64,000 nucleotides of DNA from Bigelowiella natans CCMP2755 (taxonomy: Eukaryota; Protista; Cercozoa). The translations under genes were made by a program, and so were the position numbers. Under the pieces are notes generated by a model. The model made no database searches and was not told where the DNA came from. It was given only the letters and a program-made list of their open reading frames with translations. Of this stretch, positions 7,173 through 17,887 are shown in pieces (within the stretch, counting starts at the first letter, position 1; every line of letters begins with the position of its first letter). The stretch spans positions 1 through 64,000 of the forward strand of contig ADNK01000828.1 in assembly GCA_000320545.1 (NCBI GenBank). Direction: 5' to 3'.

Positions 7173-8306
7173 TAGTAGCAGCGCAATCAGATACCACGAC
7201 ACTACGGTTTTCTTGCATTGGGTGTTGGTCCAACAAAGATAGGTCGCCGAGGCAACAGCAAACAACAAGCTAGGTGTTTCTTACTTCCACTCGCTCTTCG
7301 TCATGGTGCGGGACGTTGCCTGTAAACAAGCACAAAGGAGTTGACAAATGACAAGTAATTACATTGAAAAGGGGAAAGTAATGAATAAAAAACAACAATT
7401 AATAACAAGCGGCCTGTCGTTACATAGAAATGACGCAAGCATCTGCATTGATTTTGTGCCTATGTTGCAGTACCTGGATCGCCTTTTTGTTTTCATTTAT
7501 CTCGTCTCTGAGATCCTGTTCCGATTGTTCCTCATTTGCTGCTGCTGCTTTTGTTGCACCGACATTATCATCAGTGCCATCCTGGTCATCATTCTCGTTG
7601 GGAGGGGGCTGTTCCTTTCTTCTTCTCCTGAGGCCACCTCCTCGCAAGCCGGTTGATGAGGACGACGTGGACATAGAAGACGAGTTCCAGGCTCCTCGGC
7701 GCTGTTTATATATTACATTCAGAGCTTTCACTTATTCGATCCCGAGATTCGAACAAGTCCAACAACAATAGAAGGAGATAAGAAGAAGAAGAAGAAGAAG
7801 AAGCAGGGAGAAGAAGCAGGGAGAAGAACTAGGAGATACCCGGAATCGCCGACGAAGCTCATCAGAGCTACGACTACTACTACTCGGATCTGACAATACC
7901 AACAAGCTCTGGAACAGTGGCAGGCCGCTGTGTTCCGAGTTCACTCCCCTAGGAAGATAGCGTGGTTAACGACGACGACGACGCACAACGAAGAATATAT
8001 TTGTGCCTCATGCATATGCACTCTGCTAAGCCTAAGAAAAAGAAGAAGAAGAAGGAGGAGGAGGAGAAGAAGAAGACTCTACCGGCTCAGGAGGCGGCAC
8101 TTGTTTCCACTACATCGCCCTCCCCTTTCCTCCAAAAGTAACGATAGCGGCAGCAGGCACAGTGTCAGGCAGGCCAGCGCAGCGCGGCCACAGGGGCGCG
8201 TACGCGAGGCCATGAGTTGTTTCCCTTCCCAAGTAGCGATGGCGGTTGATCGATCTCCCTCCCCCTTCCGATAAGTAGCCAATCCAGCCCAGGGGCGGGT
8301 CACCAC
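1..8306 (-). CDS. Large multi-exon gene (>20 short exons) of unknown product, 3' end runs off the window; start not resolved
   Basis: Many GT-AG-bounded exons read as plausible protein, several joining in consistent phase. Examples: RDRAYELLRDSRRQGELQK...WLERVIRESSEELRMR (~6670-6890), EKALFRVLHRDESTK+SLRIHAPKCIECLLLSAFK (~4130-4300), ECPPREQVGSLLAVFVCRQVLLDACLSLQRALQAH (~4820-4930), AQARKLDESLKRQVEYFNRTTQ+NWAPLVVADPAS (~1865-2200). Introns are filled with microsatellites. Confidence 0.6.
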
Positions 8307-8535: not shown

Positions 8536-9499
8536 ATGATCGTGTACGCTCTCTTCGTCGCTTGGAACGTGCTTGCTGGGCTTGTGATACGTTGGTTCGG
8601 AGGAGGGTTCCTCTCCACCCTCCTTGGGTGCCTAGGGAGCTCGGCGTGGATGTTTGACATGCTCTACCTCCTCGAGTTTCATGTGAGAGCTTACTACAGC
8701 CTCAAGCGCTTTCACGAGAAGGGTCCAATGCCTTTGACAGAATGGCATGAGATTGCGCAAATAGCAGCCCCTATGGACATCGATATATTCGGTCATATGA
8801 ACAACGCCCGCTACAATCGAAGGGCGGAGTACTCGAGGTGGTGGAGTTAAAACCATGGCGTGAAAAAAGATATTTCATTTTTCGTCTGCATTAAAAACTC
8901 AAGCACTTTCTTCCTATCTGACCCATCGTGCATCTAACACGCTCAGAATAAGTTACTTCATTGAATGCGGTCTGCGAAGAGCGTCGAATGGGCTTGGAAT
9001 TCGTGGGGGCATCCTTAAAAGCATGGCGATGCGGTTTCGTCGGCAGATCAACCCCTTTCAGACTTTTAGTATCCGTATAAAATTGATAGGGTGGAAGGGG
9101 AAGGAGTTGTATTTTCAGCAAAGAATGGTGACAAAGGATGCCCGAGGGGAGGAGTTCGTCAACGCCTTCTCCGTCTCGATCTATAAGATTCCCAGGAAAA
9201 GTAAGTACAACGCCATCGATATGATTAAGGTTATAGACCCGGCCTTCGCGAAGACAGTTGGAACAGATTCTTTCTTATCAGATGATCCTAACGACGATTT
9301 GAAAATGGAGGATAACTCCGAATCAAAGAGTATCTCATCTGCAGCTGCAGCACAACCTCTATCATCACAATCCAGTAACGGCCAGCAAGAGTCGACTGAG
9401 CGGCAAAAGAAAATCAGTGTTTCGGATCTAGTTCGTGCATACAATCGATTCGAGGAACTATCCAGCACCTATCTTAATCCTAATAGACTTCGCAATTAA
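8536..9499 (+). CDS. Thioesterase (hot-dog fold, THEM6/4HBT-like) with N-terminal hydrophobic segment; 2 exons (8536-8837, 8947-9499)
   Basis: Motif DIDIFGHMNNARY followed by MRFRRQINPFQTF is typical of THEM6-like thioesterases. The phase-2 intron joins YSR|ISYF in frame. Confidence 0.85.
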
Positions 9500-10279: not shown

Positions 10280-13200
10280 TTAAATGACTTGAACTCCAAC
10301 CTTGGCACACAGTTCTCTAAACTTGCTCAGCTTGTCCTCCGGAACAAGGGACCGCAGGGCTGATGAAAGATACCCCTTACGCTGATCTGAAAGCTGAGAT
10401 AAGGACCTCGCAATGTAGCCTTCAACGCCAGGGACATCCTCAAAAGGATCATGTATTCGATCCCTTGAGTGCGCTAGCCGAGTACCTCGAACGCCTCTAT
10501 CGCCCTCGTCTTCGAGCACGGACAGATAATTGTCCTTTTCCGCGGGCTCCGCCGATGCCGAAAGCAGAGTTTCAATGAGCGCTTTGAACATGTTTTCGGG
10601 AAGGCCTGGTATGTCCCATATGGTCCCATCCTCCACTATCATTCGCGTGGTTGCAATAAGTGCTGCCTTACGGCGAATGCGTGACTTGATCTTAGGGAGG
10701 AATTCCGTCCAGAAACGAGCTTGGATTCGACCAAGAGTCTCAGCATCAAGTTTGGATTTTAAGACTGTGATTCCATGCTTCCCGACCAACACACTCAGCA
10801 GATTCATCACCGGGCCGAATCGGCGTATCGAGAGCGGCACCGTGTTCGAGCGGCCGAGCTTCTTCACGCATGGCGCAAGAATTCTCTCTAAGACCGGAGC
10901 CAGCAGTTGCGCGTCGAGGGTCTCCACGAGCCCAACGAGGACCTTCATCCCCGACTGCTCTGTCCTTCTGCTTTGCATCAGAAGCTCAGCAACACGTATG
11001 ATTTGGTCAACCACATTGCCCTGAGTTGCTAGAAGCTGCGCACATCCCTTCTTCAGGTAGGCCTGCAGCAATCGTACTAGTCCCGGCACATTGCCGGCCA
11101 TCTGCCAATTACAAGGGGCGAGAATGGGCTGAAAGAGCGAAAGATATGTAGGACTGATATCTCCTGGAGTGGCCTCCAGAAGCATGGCTATCACTTGGAA
11201 CACGTACGGCATCAAGTCCTCAAGCTGCGATTGCAGAATCTCTTGGAAAAACGGAAACAGGGCGGCTTCTAGCTCTGCCACGACTGCGAGCAGTTTTCCT
11301 GTTGCCGCCGTATCTATCCCCCCCTCACCTGGTTGTGGAATTGAACGCCCCTCCGCCATTGCCGTTGAGAGCTGCACGCGCACGACAATGGCCAACGTCT
11401 CGAAGAGGTCATGAGTGAAAGTCGTATCTGCGCATTTATTCGGCTCGACAGTGAGGCGTTTGACCATGGTTGTAATCCCAACCATCACTTGCGGGAGGAG
11501 CGGTTGGATGCTCTTAGGAGGGGAGAACCCAAGCATGTCCATCAACGCGCTCATCGCGTACTTGTTGTAAGGCCATAGGTTGTGCAGGTAGCTCTCCGAG
11601 GTAATGATTTGCAATAAGGGATCGAAGGTTTGAACAAGCACGCTGTGTACTGCTTCTGGGGAAAGCTGCCTGCGGAACTTGTCGCCAATGGGAGTCATCG
11701 TCACAAACCGCTGGAGAATCGCTGCCGTGTAGGAATGGACGACGTAGGAACTCGATTTGAGCAGCTTTGTAAGGGAGGGGGTGATGGCGAGTACGTCCTC
11801 CTGCGACAACTGCAACCTGAAGACCATGAGCGCCTTGAGAAGTAGTGCTATGAGCTCCGGTTGTGTCTTTGGCCCTACCGTGGCGAGAGATGCGAACACT
11901 TGGTCTTGTAAGAACTTGGCAATGTTTACCTTTGTGTTGAGGGTTGTCGCTCCGTATTGTCGGATGGTGCCCTTGATAGATACAGCAAGGAAGAGACTCA
12001 GCGCAGTGTACTTAGCTTGCCACCTGTCGTTGTCCTGTTCAGGGTCATACTGATCCATCAGTCGCTCGATGTGCCGCATACACAGTGATGTCACTTCGTC
12101 CTCAAACTGGACTAGGAGCCTGCGGATCAGATCAGTTGCGGATTTTGACCGAGTGCTTGTCTGGGAACCGTCAATGTTGTCCTTGACGTAGAGATAGGGA
12201 CTATCTGCAAAGCTCTCGCGATCTGCGTGGCGCATCATGAGGTTGGGGATGCAAATCCGCTCGACAATTGCTGCAATAGCCCCGTCCCCCTCGAAGAGGT
12301 TGCGATTCCAAGGCTGCCCTGACACTGTAGTCAAATAGCCAATGGCGTTGGTTACGAGGCGGTCATATGTCACATCCTCTCCGTGAGCGATTGCAATAGT
12401 CCATACGTCCCTTGTTAGTTGCGACAGGAAAGGCTTGTACTGGTCCTCATGCTTACCAACAAACAGGGAGAGGGCTTCTACAACGTTTGTGTGCAGTTCC
12501 AGGAGCTGCCGGTCGCTCTCCGAATCTATTCCCAGATCAAACTGCCCACCGTCCGTACTTTTCGAGGTAGAAGCGCCTCGGATGAGCAGCAACTTGTGAT
12601 ACATCGTCATCCACTTCGCTATCGTGTCCTCGAAGAAGGCCGGGAGCACGGTAGAGCAGAACGTAACATGTATGCGAGTCACGAATCGAAGCACCTTGTA
12701 GATATAAGCTTTCCGGTCGTCCTGTGCGGTGCCAAGTTGTTGTTGTTGTCCCTGCTCCGCATCAGCTACTACCATGTCGGTAAGGGCTGTAAAGACTTCC
12801 AGTATGGGCTGCTGTAGCGTCTCCAACGAAAAGCGCAGCTGTTCAATTTCTCTTGTTGATACTTCGGGGTCGCGGAATCGTTCCAGAACCGAATCAGCTG
12901 CTTCAACAAGCCCGGCCATCGCTTGGAAGTTCTTGGCCCCCAAATTGGCCGCAAGACGATCTCTTATCTCCGGCAGCAACGACAGCCATTTTTGCGGGAA
13001 ATCGTGCATCGCGATCGCCTAGTAACAATAGCATAGAGAAATCAAGAACACGCAACACATATATCATCCACGTACTTAAAATAATAACCCGGCAACCCAT
13101 ATGGTGTGAATTATCATTGCGATTCCCAAGCTATAAATTTGTCGTTTCGCTTTTCTTTTTTTCATGGTGGAACAATTAACTACTGAAAATCGTAAGGAAT

Positions 13201-13892
13201 ACATTATAAACTACCTGGATGGCGTCTGTGAGCTGCTGCTGCGCTATTACAGGAACATCGCAAAGTAGTTCCAAGACGACTCGTTTCACTTCAGTCTTTT
13301 CTGGTTCTGAGATGAGGAATTGCGGATCTTTCTCATCTGTCTCATCCACAGCATCGTCATCGTCTGGTTTAAGAGCCCAATGTGCCTTGACCGTATTCTT
13401 GAATCGGACCGCCGCTGCCTGCAGCGCAATGCTGCGGGGGTTGTCCTTACGGTGGGCTATAATGCTCATCAGGTTATGCAGAAATCCTGGTTGCTTTTCC
13501 ATCGCAAAAATATTCTTCTCTGCCTGAGTTCTCTCGAATTCACTTACGCCGATCAACGATTTTTCGAAGGCCTCAGCAAGCGCCTGCTCGCTCCCTCCCC
13601 GCAACCTTGTTACCATGTGCATCTGGGGACGTCGAGGCAGAGGAGGAGGCGGATAAGGGGGGGCTACAGCGTATCTAGGGGCGCTAGCACAACCTTTGGA
13701 GGCCGCTGCCAGGGATCCACCACCACCACCATCATCGCTAGTGGTTGTTCGAATAAATGATGATGATGATGATGGTGATGATGATGTAACTATGGAGAGC
13801 AACATACTGCCCAAGCTCCTCCCACTTGGAGTAGTGTTGGCTTGGAACTTGCATCCCCCACTTCGCCCTCCTTTTATTCCTATACAAACCAT
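10280..13892 (-). CDS. CSE1: Exportin-2 / CSE1 (importin-alpha re-exporter) with N-terminal extension; exons ~13892-13215 and 13018-10280
   Basis: Importin-beta N-terminal domain (AEKNIFAMEKQPGF...AAAVRFKNTVKAHW), then AIAMHDFPQKWLSLLPEI, W..K..AL.L, VHSYTAAIL, NKYAMSALM and FPFFQEILQSQLEDLMPYVFQV, all characteristic of CSE1. The CAG|gtag...tag|GCG intron is in phase 0. Confidence 0.9.
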
Positions 13893-14337
13893 TATTGTCA
13901 GGCAAGGGTATCAAGAAACAGACTGTTAGCGCATGCGAAAGAGGGACATTTCTCATCTACAATTGTGTTGCAGACCGCTGCTGCAGTTTCCCCTGTTGTG
14001 GGCGGCCGTCCTTTGTATGAGCCCTTGCAGGGCAATATGTTGCAGGAATAAACATGTCACCAAGATGCAAACCGCAGCTCCTCCCTAATTTCCAGGACAT
14101 CGTCAACAAGGTGAAGTGTAAAAAAAAGTAACAAAGCATTCCTCCATTCCTCCCCTTGACCAATCAGTGACTCTACGCAGTTCTTAGCAACCCTGTCGTT
14201 TATAATACAATCGATTTCCACAATATCTAAGCCTAATCTTCATCCTAAGGCTCATTAGTGCCAACCCGGTGACGTGCACTGGCGTGGCCGCCTCCGACCG
14301 CCATTCCCAGGAGTTAGCAGAATTTGACCACGTCCCG

Positions 14338-14370
<33 letters not shown>

Positions 14371-14542
14371 TGGTGTGTGTAGGGTTGTTTTCCGATGAAT
14401 TTAATCCAATGTTTTCGCAGTCGCAGTCTCCATTCGCCATGATGAGCAAGAACAAATTAATTTATCCCTGTCGGCTGGCAAAAAGTACACGGTTTTACCG
14501 GTGCGACAAGTCCAAAGGATGTCGTAAAATGCGTCAGGTCTA

Positions 14543-15184
14543 ATCGGCACTCAAAACGATCAATTTTGGCGTCCTGTCCCATCATCCTTTCAACTGCTCC
14601 ATGAGCAACACTTCTTTCTTTCTTTCTGGCGGCCATTCCCACATGAGGGAGAAATTGGACGGCATGTGGTGTTTCCTGTTCACATTCCGTAACCAACCCT
14701 TTGCGCTGTGGAGCACCCGCCCCACACTTCACTTCCCCACTGTCAGTGCTCAGCAGCAAAAATTGCCAAAATGCGCAACGTGAAAGTTTGCCCACTGACG
14801 ACCTGCTGGCTGAGGATGAAATGAAATGCATGCGTGCGCTAGTGCAACTTGCAGATCAAACGCTGTGCCACAATTTTGCTGAGGCCTGCCTGGACATGTT
14901 TCGTGCGCATGCACTAGCTAGTGGCCAGCACGGTGGACAGCACTGCTCGCAGCACGCACTGCTGTGCAGCAGGTGTGACATGCTCCACCTGCTGCTGGTG
15001 CATTGTTCATCCAGAAATGCATCGTGCACGTCTAGACGTGTGCGCGCTGCACATGATCGATCTAGCGATGTCACATCGAACGCCATCATCAGCTAGTCAG
15101 GGACATGTCTAGACGTGCGTCACAGCAGATGAAGAGTCAGTGAAGACATCGCAATGTGCGAGTTGCAATTGATGATGCTCCAAA
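14543..15184. other. TpA-depleted intergenic tract (relic element)
   Basis: Manual count: 8 TA in 642 bp, 7 of them in CTAG. CpG is common and TG/CA is abundant. Confidence 0.85.
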
Positions 15185-15317
15185 TATTTGCATCCACTGC
15201 TAGAAGTGCTTGCCATGCAGCTAAACAAGCTAGCAAGACAAAGCTATGAAATGATTTATTTGGGCATCTTCACAATGTGCATCCAGCATTCAGAAGGTGG
15301 CATCCTGCATTGCCTTG

Positions 15318-17887
15318 CTAGCGCCGTGCAATAAATCCAATTTCTTCTTCGCTAAAACCGTGTGGACGTGGAACCGGGGCACCATACTTCGAGTCCAAAC
15401 TGCTACTGCTTGAGACACTACCTCGTGAGCTGAGTCGTCCACCTCTACGCCTACTTCTATAATGACTCTGGCTACATCCATTCGTGCCGCAGCAGTATCC
15501 TATAGCACCGAATATCAATGCGCTCAAGAAAGCCACTGCTACATAAAGAGCAATCTGCATGGTCCCATTATATTTATCGTTATCGTTGCTTCCTTCGCTA
15601 CTGTCACTTTCGCCCCTTCTAGATGCATATAAGGAAGTCTTCATTAGAGAGCCTTCGCGGATCGCGCAGCTGACCCCTGTGAATCCTGGGTCACAAAAAC
15701 ACTTTCCGTGGCGGCACATACCCTGAGAAAACGGAGGTGGTGGTGGTGATACATATGGTAGAAAATCATGGATAAAGTTTAGTGCCCTGAAGTACGCGCA
15801 TGTCGCAGCATGAAAGGAGTAAAAAGTACTTTGATGATTGAACAAAATGTGGACGGATAACGCCGTGTCACAAAAGAATAACTCAAATTATGGAAAAAGG
15901 TGGAAGCTTTTGTTATCCTCTCTCCCTTCCCATCTTTACCTTTCCATTGCAAGATTGAGGACAAGGGATCACGGTGTCGCAAGCTTTGCCCATATAACCA
16001 GGATCGCAGTAGCACTGAAACCACCGGCACTGCCCGTGACCTCCACACACTTGGTTATTTCCGACGTCCTTGTTGTGCGAGACCGGGCATTGTTGTTCAA
16101 CGGAGCAGTCTAATAGTAGATAAGCATATCGATGAGGAATGGTTGGGTAAAAATATATGTGTAGCATATGCGTTAGTGAGAATATGAAAAGCAACCTGCT
16201 CCTGTGTAGCCGATTGAACATTCGCAAGTGCCATGAGAGCACATTCCATGAAACGAACAGTTGTTTAAGCACCCACTGCGAGTTGATTTCCGATTTAATT
16301 TAAGTACGCATAAAACATAAAAAATAGATTTACCTCAATGCGCCGTGATTCGGGGTGTTAATAGGGGCTGAGCAGTCAGAATTTCCCCAGCCGGGGTCGC
16401 ATAGGCATCTGGTACGAACGATGTCAGAAAAGCAAAAAGCGGAGAAGGAGGGAAGGGTGATTAGAGAGGCAAGAAACCAGGGAGAGAAAGGTGAGAATTA
16501 ATTAAGAGAAGGGGAATACTAGGGAGTTGTAGAATAAGAATGTTGCACCTTCCACTCACGCAAATTCCATTGTTACTGCAACTGGGGGTCCCTGGGCAGT
16601 GTTCATGCTCAGAGCAATCCTGGCCTTTGAAGCCTGGTTCGCAGTAGCACTGGCCGTACATACATTTACCCTGCCGGTTGCAATTTGAAGGACAAGGCAT
16701 CTGGTATACCAAAAGACCATAAACACTCTTAGTGATGAAGAATCATGGAAATTTCTAGACTCGAAGTAGAATAATAAAGTGAAAAACAATATGGGATGCT
16801 ATAAATATGAACTTCAACAGATTAATTACAGCACTGTGGTACACGACTATTCTTTTTGCTCACTTTAAGTTCACAGGTAGTTCCGTTGTAGCCAGGATCG
16901 CAGAAGCAGCGCCCATTCTTGCAAAGCCCTTTTTAGTTTAACGAAGGTTCATTTCATGTGAGCAAAAAGTTTGAAAAAGATTTGTTTTGTGGATAAGATG
17001 TGTCAGCTGAAAATAACAAATTAAGCCCGACGAATTCTTCTTATGCCAAATTGTCCAAAGGCTACCGTGATCGCTGCAATTATTTCCGCACATATCCACC
17101 GAACAGTCATCCCCTGTATATATAAATGTTAGCACAGGTTCTTTTAAGGAAAAAGAATTATGAATGACCCGTAAACTGAGGGAGGCATTCGCATATCCCA
17201 TTGACACAGACACCATTCATCGAGCAATCATTTGGACATCCTTTAGCAACGCTTGCAACGCTCGTGGAGAGGGAAGCGGGTTGAGTCCACTGGATTATTG
17301 GATCAAGCAGCCTCTTGCACCTAAAAAGAGATTGAAATATTAATTTGCGGCACTTAATTCCAAATATATGTTTGCTTCTTAGGAACGTACTCTGAAGCCC
17401 TATGGCATTCTGCAGCAGCCTCCTGCGTTGTCATGTTAGATTTACTTCCACTATTTTGTGTGCGCACAGCTTCCCGAAGCTTGAGCCATTCGGATACTAT
17501 ATGACCGCCATGACTGGATATTAATTGCTGGCACTGCTGGGGAGGGGATGCGATAATTATCTCCAGGGATGATCCTGCCCTGCCTGCATTGTTTTTATGG
17601 TGTACTGGAGCGGTATGATTTTTCCCTTGGAAGGGAGAATTACTACGATCTCGGAGTTGTCGTGGTGTATTTCTAACGACTGCGTCCCTCAGTACCTCCG
17701 CGTCGGAAAGTTGTCCAAACTCAGGTGCTACTTCAATAGATGCTGAATCGACGTATGCTCTCAGCATAGACGCGGCACCCTCGGAGTTGTGCCGCATCTC
17801 AAGATTGGAAGAGAAACATAAAGGGACAAGGAGGAAATAGGCGGCAATTTGAAGGGTTCTCCCTCCATGCCCCAGCCTGGGCGCCAT
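15318..17887 (-). CDS. Type I membrane protein with signal peptide, 7 tenascin-type EGF repeats, a TM helix and a short cytoplasmic tail; multi-exon
   Basis: Spliced exons give [81 protein letters not shown] and four more repeats. TM segment IALYVAVAFLSALIFGAIGYCC; signal-like LQIAAYFLLVPLCFS. Confidence 0.85.

What the first reader, a model, noticed from the sequence alone, without database searches (positions are those of the whole stretch)
13593..13892. CSE1 exportin with a ~95-aa leader ending in the ubiquitin C-terminal motif RLRGG
Seen: homology to CSE1 starts right after ...QMHMVTRLRGG|SEQALAEAFEKSL (RLRGG at 13593-13607). It is preceded by an open S/G/P/R-rich frame. Hydrophobic segments upstream (MLCYFFLHFTLLTMSW near 14140, joinable by a phase-1 gtgac...tatag intron; or MRNVPLSHALTVCFLIP at 13956) could supply a signal peptide. 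Established: ubiquitin ends in LRLRGG and is cleaved after GG by deubiquitinases, and chlorarachniophytes import host-encoded proteins into the periplastid compartment using bipartite leaders. Inference: this is a host-encoded nuclear-transport factor for the nucleomorph, and its leader may be removed by a DUB-like protease at RLRGG.
Basis: partly seen in the sequence, partly recalled or inferred. Interest (0 to 1): 0.7.

Follow-up and report, generated by a model that had tools for sequence, protein, structure and literature searches.

The report
Leader-bearing CSE1 exportin ending RLRGG
A chlorarachniophyte alga makes a nuclear-export receptor (CSE1) with a secretion signal and transit-like leader, probably sending it to the swallowed green alga's relic nucleus. 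The leader ends in ubiquitin's tail, RLRGG, in two genera, which may mark where it is cut off.

Summary
RLRGG (13593-13607, minus strand) lies directly before the first residue that aligns with canonical CSE1/CAS exportins. Spliced RNA contigs from three studies show two upstream introns.

The real start is the ATG at 14304, with an in-frame stop four codons upstream. It gives a 145-residue leader: a signal-peptide-like N-terminus, then a basic, Ser/Thr/Ala/Gly-rich, disordered stretch ending RLRGG.

The only relative found with a leader, Amorphochlora amoebiformis (46% identical), also starts with a signal-peptide-like segment. Its otherwise unalignable leader ends in the same RLRGG-S. Both leader ends match ubiquitin's last ten residues at 7 of 10 positions. 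No ubiquitin fold precedes them.

A CSE1 directed to the periplastid compartment and nucleomorph is well supported but not shown. Cleavage at GG by a deubiquitinase-like protease is plausible and untested. Whether a separate host CSE1 exists, and where this gene came from, stay unresolved.

The scan has already noted LRGG-ended leaders on an NTF2 gene and a ubiquitin E2 gene elsewhere in this genome. I did not test those. I found no paper describing the motif.

The parts
14328..14382 (-). (CA)n microsatellite at or just downstream of the transcript's 5' end; RNA contigs stop here
   Evidence: Sequence. Read laying skipped this repeat and shows zero depth from 14366 upstream to 14539.
14266..14327 (-). 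Exon A: end of the 5' UTR plus the start codon at 14304-14302. It codes MAVGGGHASARHR (the basic n-region). An in-frame TAA lies at 14316-14314.
   Evidence: Translation reads KFC*LLGMAVGGGHASARHR. Covered by contigs of runs X1, X3 and X4.
14085..14265 (-). Intron A, 181 nt, GT..AG. Spliced in the majority form and retained in a minority of contigs.
   Evidence: Joint 14083|14265 seen in three runs at depth 7.3, 11.2 and 9.4. Unspliced contigs 14056-14294 have depth 3.6-7.9. The joint rests on 58-nt unitigs with 28 and 30 letters on each side.
13976..14084 (-). Exon B: 36 codons plus the first base of a split Gly codon. It carries the hydrophobic core AAVCILVTCLFL (14043-14078) of the signal-peptide-like segment.
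   Evidence: Translation. Best 11-residue Kyte-Doolittle mean is 3.02. A 230-nt contig joins it to exon C in three runs.
13880..13975 (-). Intron B, 96 nt, GT..AG, phase 1.
   Evidence: Joint 13878|13975 with 87 and 111 letters on each side, in runs X1, X3 and X4.
13608..13879 (-). Transit-peptide-like part of the leader (first part of exon C). Basic, Ser/Thr/Ala/Gly/Pro-rich and low in complexity; it includes the (TCA)n/(GGT)n repeats at 13749-13791.
   Evidence: Translation. Composition is 48% S/T/A/G, 13 basic and 2 acidic residues. AlphaFold2 gives coil at mostly low confidence; pLDDT block means are 45-61, except 80 over the proline-rich residues 71-80.
13593..13607 (-). RLRGG, the last five residues of the leader, followed by Ser, which begins helix 1
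   Evidence: Identical RLRGG-S in Amorphochlora P0001 residues 78-83. The tail matches ubiquitin's last ten residues at 7 of 10 positions.
13215..13592 (-). Rest of exon C: mature N-terminus with the importin-beta N-terminal domain (HEAT helices)
   Evidence: Pfam IBN_N, E = 1.6e-08. AlphaFold2 helices start at residue 96, with pLDDT above 90.
13019..13214 (-). Intron C, 196 nt, GT..AG, phase 0
   Evidence: Joint 13017|13214 in 3.5-3.7 kb contigs of three runs; sequence.
10280..13018 (-). Last exon: 912 codons plus the stop (10282-10280). It holds the Cse1 and CAS_CSE1 domains.
   Evidence: ORF list. Pfam Cse1 3.1e-77 and CAS_CSE1 5e-58. 46% identity to Amorphochlora P0001 over 100% of the query.

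Best explanation
This is a four-exon nuclear gene of a chlorarachniophyte (Bigelowiella-like). It encodes a complete CSE1/CAS exportin, the RanGTP-dependent receptor that returns importin-alpha from the nucleus, behind a 145-residue N-terminal leader. The leader has a short basic start, a 12-residue hydrophobic core like an ER signal peptide, and then about 110 disordered, basic, hydroxyl-rich residues like a chlorarachniophyte transit peptide. It ends in RLRGG.

Shown here: the leader is transcribed and spliced in frame with the exportin, and the Amorphochlora orthologue has the same architecture and the same RLRGG-S junction.

Inferred: the precursor enters the ER co-translationally and crosses into the periplastid compartment, where the mature exportin recycles importin-alpha for the nucleomorph.

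Inferred with less confidence: the ubiquitin-tail-like RLRGG marks where the leader is cut off. The enzyme would be a protease with LRGG specificity, either a deubiquitinase-like enzyme or a papain-like LXGG protease. The cut would free a protein that starts where ordinary CSE1 proteins start, and removing the transit-like part would stop onward import into the plastid stroma.

My sub-confidences are: gene model and leader 0.9; periplastid/nucleomorph destination 0.75; RLRGG as the cleavage site 0.4.
For: - Protein family: Pfam IBN_N, Cse1 and CAS_CSE1.
- Transcript structure: spliced contigs from three studies remove three GT..AG introns and link exons A to D.
- Reading frame: exon-wise translations are open in one frame from the ATG at 14304, with a stop four codons upstream.
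- Leader make-up: the hydrophobic core scores 3.02, and the rest of the leader has 13 basic and 2 acidic residues and 48% S/T/A/G.
- Second genus: Amorphochlora P0001 (1088 aa, 46% identical) has a hydrophobic N-terminus and an 82-residue leader ending RLRGG-S. Leader identity elsewhere is about 14%, against 6 of 6 at the motif. A transcript fragment, P0013, covers that leader. Amorphochlora has no internal Met near the junction.
- Position of the junction: canonical CSE1 proteins start about 7 residues before to 2 after it, and none of the 150 best hits has LRGG near its N-terminus.
- Structure: in the AlphaFold2 model the leader is coil, mostly at low confidence, and helix 1 begins at the Ser after GG.
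- Ubiquitin resemblance: both tails match ubiquitin's LHLVLRLRGG at 7 of 10 positions. None of 200000 shuffles of the leader did so at the tail.
- Literature context: rhizarian polyubiquitin carries an S or A insertion after GG, with both reported in Lotharella amoeboformis (PMC3014934). B. natans has a ubiquitin gene with signal and transit peptides (PMC3542566).
Against: - No localisation or N-terminal protein data exist.
- SignalP and ChloroP could not be run.
- Neither leader contains a detectable ubiquitin fold. From my own knowledge, ordinary deubiquitinases cleave bare RLRGG peptides poorly.
- No leader-bearing deubiquitinase was found or searched for.
- Only two species could be compared. 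The mature N-terminal region is about 48% identical, so six conserved residues could belong to the mature protein (P about 0.01 at that rate).
- The exon A to exon B junction rests on 58-nt unitigs, and no single contig spans the whole transcript, because contigs break at two repeats.
- Intron A is retained in a sizeable minority of contigs.
- A separate host-type CSE1 was not demonstrated.
Confidence: 0.45

Rival explanations
1. The destination is the same (periplastid compartment and nucleomorph), but RLRGG is not a cleavage site. It would be either the conserved first residues of the mature exportin or a recognition or retention element within the transit-like sequence. Its likeness to ubiquitin's tail would then be coincidental or only historical, for example a remnant of an old ubiquitin fusion. 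The leader would be removed elsewhere by an unrelated peptidase, or not at all.
For: No ubiquitin fold precedes the motif. The adjacent mature region is about 48% identical between the two species, so a conserved hexapeptide is not extraordinary. Only two sequences are available. One RLRGG per 64 kb is within chance. How transit-like sequences are removed in periplastid compartments is unknown in general (PMC5756292).
Against: The motif occupies positions that are the unconserved extreme N-terminus, or lie beyond it, in 38 canonical CSE1 proteins. The match to ubiquitin extends to 7 of 10 residues in both species, through partly different positions. The scan's notes report LRGG at leader ends of two unrelated proteins in this genome; I did not test that.
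Confidence: 0.35
2. The signal peptide sends the protein somewhere other than the periplastid compartment, such as the ER lumen, the secretory pathway or the plastid stroma. Alternatively, the gene yields both a host-cytosolic and an organellar form through intron retention or downstream starts, and it is the cell's only CSE1.
For: Signal-plus-transit leaders of chlorarachniophytes also direct proteins to the stroma (PMC4641359, PMC12730881). Intron A is retained in part of the RNA. In-frame Met codons exist downstream. No second CSE1 of a chlorarachniophyte was identified.
Against: An importin-alpha exporter has no known role in the ER lumen or the stroma, which have no Ran system (established knowledge). 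With intron A retained, the reading frame from the ATG at 14304 is not continuous with exon B, because an in-frame TAG lies directly before exon B. Amorphochlora has no Met near the junction and no intron within its leader, so a leaderless form is not conserved. The search for a host paralogue was limited by unnamed database entries, so finding none carries no weight.
Confidence: 0.12
3. There is no leader. Translation starts at MHMVTRLRGG, and the open frame upstream is 5' UTR kept open by simple repeats.
For: A start at that Met would give an N-terminus only 4-10 residues longer than canonical CSE1 proteins. Part of the upstream frame is trinucleotide repeat, which lacks stops.
Against: The frame stays open for 145 codons across two splice junctions that both preserve phase. 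It begins at the first AUG of the covered transcript and has a stop just upstream. It encodes a hydrophobic core exactly where a signal peptide should be. The orthologue has an equivalent leader and no such Met.
Confidence: 0.03

Closest known systems
Canonical CSE1/CAS (exportin-2; yeast Cse1p, human CSE1L)
   Same: It has the same three Pfam domains, in the same order, over the whole length. Some 2208 relatives were found, and the best are 33% identical and align from the residues right after GG to the C-terminus.
   Different: It carries a 145-residue N-terminal leader that none of the 150 best non-chlorarachniophyte relatives has. It is strongly divergent, with a stem branch of 1.46 substitutions per site.
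Nucleus-encoded periplastid- and nucleomorph-targeted proteins of chlorarachniophytes with a signal peptide plus transit-peptide-like leader (EFL, histones, POLD, RFC1, RPA1; Hirakawa et al. 2009-2011, Suzuki et al. 2016 PMC5635652)
   Same: It has an N-terminal hydrophobic signal-like segment followed by a basic, hydroxyl-rich stretch. The mature part is a cytosolic/nuclear-type protein. The leader is shared by Bigelowiella-like and Amorphochlora genes.
   Different: Its localisation has not been tested. The conserved ubiquitin-tail motif at the leader/mature junction appears in no searchable paper. I could not check whether this gene is already among the 1,002 (Curtis 2012) or 147+134 (Suzuki 2016) predicted proteins, because those lists were not readable.
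Natural ubiquitin fusion proteins (Ub-ribosomal proteins; chlorarachniophyte Ub-actin and Ub-P1, Archibald, Teh & Keeling 2003, cited in PMC3542566) and rhizarian polyubiquitin with S/A insertions after GG (PMC3014934)
   Same: A ...RLRGG sequence lies directly upstream of the first residue of a functional protein, followed by Ser as at rhizarian polyubiquitin junctions. This architecture would release the downstream protein by cleavage after GG.
   Different: Only the last seven to ten residues resemble ubiquitin. No beta-grasp domain is detectable by Pfam, by PDB sequence search or in the AlphaFold2 model.
SELMA/ERAD-derived, ubiquitin-dependent import into periplastid compartments of red-algal origin, with its deubiquitinase
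   Same: Both link ubiquitin-system chemistry to presequences of proteins entering a periplastid compartment.
   Different: In SELMA, ubiquitin is conjugated to the preprotein and later removed. Here a ubiquitin-like tail is encoded in the presequence itself. Periplastid versions of the SELMA components are reported absent from chlorarachniophytes (PMC5756292).
Viral papain-like proteases that cut polyproteins at LXGG and also act as deubiquitinases (my own knowledge, not checked here)
   Same: A short L-R-G-G motif, without a ubiquitin fold, would serve as a processing site.
   Different: No such protease has been identified in this alga. This comparison is an analogy only.

Membership tests
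CSE1/CAS exportin (importin-beta superfamily) | Importin-beta N-terminal domain (IBN_N) | tested here: met
   PF03810, E = 1.7e-08, 34.8 bits against a cut-off of 21
CSE1/CAS exportin (importin-beta superfamily) | Cse1 central domain and CAS/CSE C-terminal domain, colinear over the full length | tested here: met
   PF08506 at 3.1e-77 and PF03378 at 5e-58. Full-length alignment to canonical CSE1 proteins.
CSE1/CAS exportin (importin-beta superfamily) | Binds RanGTP and importin-alpha and exports importin-alpha | not testable with these tools
   Needs biochemistry. The partners in the periplastid compartment were not identified here.
Chlorarachniophyte bipartite (signal peptide + transit-peptide-like) leader | N-terminal ER signal peptide | tested here: inconclusive
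   A basic start followed by a 12-residue hydrophobic core (hydropathy 3.02) in this gene, and 2.35 in Amorphochlora. No SignalP-type predictor was available.
Chlorarachniophyte bipartite (signal peptide + transit-peptide-like) leader | Transit-peptide-like region: basic, hydroxyl-rich, few acidic residues, unstructured | tested here: met
   13 basic and 2 acidic residues, 48% S/T/A/G. Coil, with pLDDT block means mostly 45-61.
Chlorarachniophyte bipartite (signal peptide + transit-peptide-like) leader | Leader is part of the mature mRNA and in frame with the protein | tested here: met
   Spliced contigs from three studies; exon-wise translations.
Chlorarachniophyte bipartite (signal peptide + transit-peptide-like) leader | Delivers the cargo to the periplastid compartment or nucleomorph | not testable with these tools
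   Needs GFP fusions in Amorphochlora amoebiformis or immunolocalisation.
Ubiquitin / ubiquitin-fusion precursor | Ubiquitin beta-grasp domain upstream of the GG | tested here: not met
   No Pfam ubiquitin hit even at E up to 10. No ubiquitin among PDB sequence matches. The leader is coil in the AlphaFold2 model.
Ubiquitin / ubiquitin-fusion precursor | C-terminal tail LRLRGG directly fused to the next protein | tested here: met
   T-RLRGG|S in this gene and H-RLRGG|S in Amorphochlora. Both match the last ten residues of ubiquitin at 7 of 10 positions.
Ubiquitin / ubiquitin-fusion precursor | Cleaved after GG by a deubiquitinase | not testable with these tools
   Needs N-terminomics or a mutant precursor.

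The most novel reading that the evidence does not exclude
LRGG at the end of the presequence is a general, encoded 'ubiquitin-tail' maturation signal for residents of the chlorarachniophyte periplastid compartment. After the precursor crosses the second membrane, a periplastid LRGG-specific (deubiquitinase-like) protease would clip the transit-like peptide off. This would both create the native N-terminus and stop the protein from being carried on into the plastid stroma. That would be a sorting principle distinct from the SELMA system of red-lineage complex plastids. It would also show that a Ran/importin-alpha/CSE1 cycle still serves a nucleus reported to lack a canonical pore complex.
Probability: 0.3. 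Interest if true: 0.85.

Novelty: new variant of a known kind. Interest (0 to 1): 0.62.

Why it matters
There are two open questions this would make testable.

First, nucleomorphs were reported to lack a canonical nuclear pore complex, and it was suggested that nuclear-transport proteins might be dispensable there (PMC6411479). A dedicated leader-bearing CSE1 kept in two chlorarachniophyte genera argues that receptor-mediated importin-alpha recycling still operates. It also gives a concrete protein to localise and pull down. The scan's notes describe a leader-bearing NTF2 as well.

Second, it is not known how periplastid residents lose their transit-like peptide or how they are kept out of the stroma, and chlorarachniophytes lack the ubiquitin-dependent SELMA import system (PMC5756292). 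A conserved ubiquitin-tail motif exactly at the leader/mature boundary is a specific, mutable candidate for that step. If it is general, it would also be a practical marker for predicting periplastid proteins and their mature N-termini.

Tried and rejected
Both candidates and the ATG at 13892 were rejected because they lie in introns.
- **Decayed ubiquitin in the leader.** This was rejected. There was no Pfam hit at E up to 10, no ubiquitin among PDB matches, and the model shows coil.
- **Exon-shuffled leader cassette.** I found no support for it. Amorphochlora encodes the whole leader and the first 110 mature residues in one exon, whereas this gene has two introns in the leader.
- **More orthologues, to test conservation.** A word search with the exon C product, an N-terminal fragment search with P0013, a metagenome scan with the two-species alignment, and a degenerate EKQPGFLH DNA pattern (120 loci) all found nothing usable.
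- **Origin and host paralogue.** A 64-sequence maximum-likelihood tree pairs the two chlorarachniophyte proteins (support 100) on a long stem. It places them, at support 95, with four sequences I could not assign to a lineage: an MMETSP0960 transcript, two ENA metagenome proteins and a record labelled Batrachochytrium salamandrivorans. They do not fall inside the clade containing Chlorokybus. I draw no conclusion on green-algal versus host origin, and I recognised no host-type chlorarachniophyte CSE1.
- **Literature.** The predicted periplastid protein lists (Curtis 2012, Suzuki 2016 supplements) and Hirakawa 2009/2010 were not readable.
- **Second LRGG in the window.** The one at 7636-7647 (minus strand) lies in a low-complexity ORF with no Pfam family and is probably chance.
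- **Raw-read RNA run.** Run X21 gave no reads on this gene at the 6% of the run that was read.

Full report
**What is at the coordinates.** On the minus strand, 13607-13593 encodes RLRGG. The same frame runs on into a protein with the three Pfam domains of CSE1/CAS exportins: IBN_N (1.7e-08), Cse1 (3.1e-77) and CAS_CSE1 (5e-58). One RLRGG in the six-frame translation of the window is not significant on its own, since shuffles give 0.19. What matters is where it sits and whether it is conserved.

**Gene model from RNA.** I laid contigs from three public runs of one organism, from three studies (X1, X3, X4), on 12800-15400. All three are spliced, so they derive from RNA. They remove three GT..AG introns on the minus strand:
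- 13019-13214, 196 nt.
- 13880-13975, 96 nt.
- 14085-14265, 181 nt.

The first two joints have 87 or more letters on each side. The third rests on 58-nt unitigs with 28 and 30 letters on each side. That is the size I would expect for a splice bubble if these are 31-mer (k = 31) unitigs. It occurs in all three runs at depth 7-11, beside unspliced contigs at depth 3.6-7.9. Contigs break at two simple repeats (13749-13791 and 14328-14382), so no single contig spans the whole transcript. No depth is seen from 14366 upstream to 14539.

I translated the exons one at a time, by reference.
- Exon A (14304-14266) reads MAVGGGHASARHR, with an in-frame TAA four codons upstream.
- Exon B (14084-13976) is open and contains AAVCILVTCLFL.
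- A split codon, G|GA, gives Gly.
- Exon C (13879-13215) is open through RLRGG into the IBN_N domain.
- The last exon (13018-10280) follows at a codon boundary.

The predicted product has 1183 residues, of which 145 precede the Ser after GG. I never handed the joined spliced model to a search tool; each exon was searched separately.

The ATG at 13892 and MRNVPL... (13956) lie in the 96-nt intron. MLCYFF... (about 14140) lies in the 181-nt intron and is in another frame. The idea that an upstream exon supplies a signal peptide was right. The particulars were not.

**Anatomy of the leader.** The hydrophobic core has an 11-residue hydropathy mean of 3.02. The remaining 110 residues have 13 basic and 2 acidic residues and are 48% S/T/A/G. 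The mature N-terminal part that follows has 15 basic and 23 acidic residues. I built an AlphaFold2 model of the exon C product from a 40-sequence alignment. Residues 1-95 are coil at mostly low confidence: pLDDT block means are 45-61, except 80 over the proline-rich stretch. The first helix starts at residue 96, the Ser directly after GG, and pLDDT is above 90 from there. SignalP and ChloroP were not available.

**The orthologue.** The best relative is a 1088-residue protein of Amorphochlora amoebiformis, P0001, 46% identical over the whole last exon. This identifies the window as chlorarachniophyte. Other notes of the scan name Bigelowiella natans. P0001 starts with a basic and then hydrophobic segment (hydropathy 2.35), followed by a basic leader that ends ...HRLHRLRGG at residue 82. 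It continues SGESLEQAL..., where this gene has SEQALAEAF....

In the pairwise alignment the leaders share about 14% identical positions, which is chance level for an optimised alignment. RLRGGS is identical at 6 of 6 positions, and the mature N-terminal part is about 48% identical. A 289-residue transcript-derived fragment (P0013, EukProt) covers the Amorphochlora leader. In the Amorphochlora genome the leader and the first 110 mature residues lie in one exon. Amorphochlora has no Met near the junction, so a leaderless start at that point is not a conserved option.

**Relation to ordinary CSE1.** An exhaustive profile-free search with P0001 found 2208 relatives. Apart from P0001 and P0013, the matches that reach furthest towards the N-terminus start at query residues 82-83, right at the end of RLRGG. 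None of the 150 best has LRGG near its N-terminus. In the 40-sequence alignment the initiator Met of the 38 canonical proteins falls about 7 residues before to 2 after the GG|S junction. A cut after GG would therefore give a protein that begins where CSE1 proteins normally begin.

**Likeness to ubiquitin.** Ubiquitin ends LHLVLRLRGG; this string occurs in 39 papers on ubiquitin. The two leader tails, MHMVTRLRGG and LHRLHRLRGG, each match it at 7 of 10 positions, partly through different positions. None of 200000 shuffles of this leader reached that at the tail, and 2.5e-05 reached it anywhere. This statistic is after the fact.

The residue after GG is Ser in both species. Rhizarian polyubiquitin carries a one- or two-residue insertion at monomer junctions, and both A and S are reported for Lotharella amoeboformis (PMC3014934; PMC12930898). 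A scan note (s1-417373), which I did not test, describes a divergent polyubiquitin in this genome with SGE linkers. The Amorphochlora junction reads RLRGG-SGE.

Against a true ubiquitin fusion, no ubiquitin domain is detectable in either leader by Pfam at E up to 10, by PDB sequence search, or in the structure model.

**Function and destination (inferred).** A protein with an ER signal peptide cannot serve the host cytosol. An importin-alpha exporter has no known role in the ER lumen or in the stroma. Signal-plus-transit-like leaders are the established route to both the plastid and the periplastid compartment in chlorarachniophytes (PMC12730881, PMC5635652, PMC3542566). The most economical reading is a CSE1 for the nucleomorph.

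This bears on the report that nucleomorphs lack a canonical pore complex and may have simplified nuclear trafficking (PMC6411479). The literature also says that chlorarachniophytes lack the ubiquitin-dependent SELMA import system, and that removal of transit-like peptides in periplastid compartments is unexplained (PMC5756292). B. natans has a nuclear ubiquitin gene with signal and transit peptides (PMC3542566), so ubiquitin chemistry in that compartment is plausible. I found no paper that combines LRGG with chlorarachniophyte, nucleomorph or periplastid terms, and none on nucleomorph exportins or importins.

**Recurrence within the scan.** Notes on other pieces of this genome report leaders ending in LRGG on an NTF2 gene (s1-417445) and on a ubiquitin E2 gene (s1-417442). 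I could not obtain those sequences and treat the notes as leads only. If they hold, chance becomes a poor explanation.

**Unresolved.** In the maximum-likelihood tree of 64 CSE1 proteins, the two chlorarachniophyte sequences pair (support 100) on a long stem of 1.46. They group (support 95) with four sequences of unclear taxonomy and do not fall within the clade containing the streptophyte Chlorokybus. I cannot say whether the gene is of green-algal or host origin.

Four attempts to find further orthologues failed. One locus fetched by the metagenome pattern scan (L070) is labelled as a human-gut metagenome. I left it out of the screen and did not use it.

**Verdict.** The periplastid/nucleomorph reading is well supported but not demonstrated. 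The RLRGG junction is conserved, exactly placed and ubiquitin-tail-like, which makes a processing site a reasonable hypothesis. I put that at about 0.4. It is readily testable, not established.

Noticed in passing
window 14085-14265 (minus strand): The first intron of the leader is retained in a sizeable share of RNA contigs (depth 3.6-7.9, against 7.3-11.2 for the spliced form). With the intron retained, an in-frame TAG lies directly before exon B, so that form cannot encode the signal peptide fused to the exportin. It could be unprocessed RNA or a regulated non-productive isoform.
   Followed up: partly
window 14328-14382 and 13749-13791: A (CA)n microsatellite sits at the apparent 5' end of the transcript. 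In-frame trinucleotide repeats (poly-Ser and poly-Gly coding) lie inside the transit-like leader. RNA contigs break at both.
   Followed up: no
window 7636-7647 (minus strand): A second LRGG (…SSSSTGLRGGGLRRRRKE…) lies in a 103-residue low-complexity ORF with no Pfam family. It is probably chance, but I did not check it against RNA.
   Followed up: partly
window 8536-8850 and 9023-9499 (plus strand): Two ORFs each match part of the 4HBT_2 thioesterase-like family, at profile positions 3-26 and 53-89. This looks like one intron-split thioesterase gene convergent with the 3' end of the CSE1 gene.
   Followed up: no
window 15318-15845 (minus strand) and 14540-14887: Upstream of the CSE1 gene there is an ORF with an EGF-like module (EGF_Teneurin, 6.6e-06). 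A separate, weakly expressed transcript is seen in raw RNA reads and in one contig at 14540-14887. The CSE1 promoter region is therefore short.
   Followed up: no
L001 6001-6887 (Amorphochlora amoebiformis contig BAAHQB010000003.1) and P0013: The Amorphochlora gene spans 12 kb and is intron-rich, yet its leader has no intron. The transcript fragment P0013 reads into the first intron after ...VAQR (intron retention) and has an open 88-codon stretch upstream of the annotated Met.
   Followed up: partly
protein databases: No protein from the window's own organism appeared in any search, although this gene is expressed. The best non-chlorarachniophyte hit, P0009 (MMETSP0960), carries header taxid 87120, which NCBI resolves to a basidiomycete and is probably a metadata error.
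   Followed up: partly
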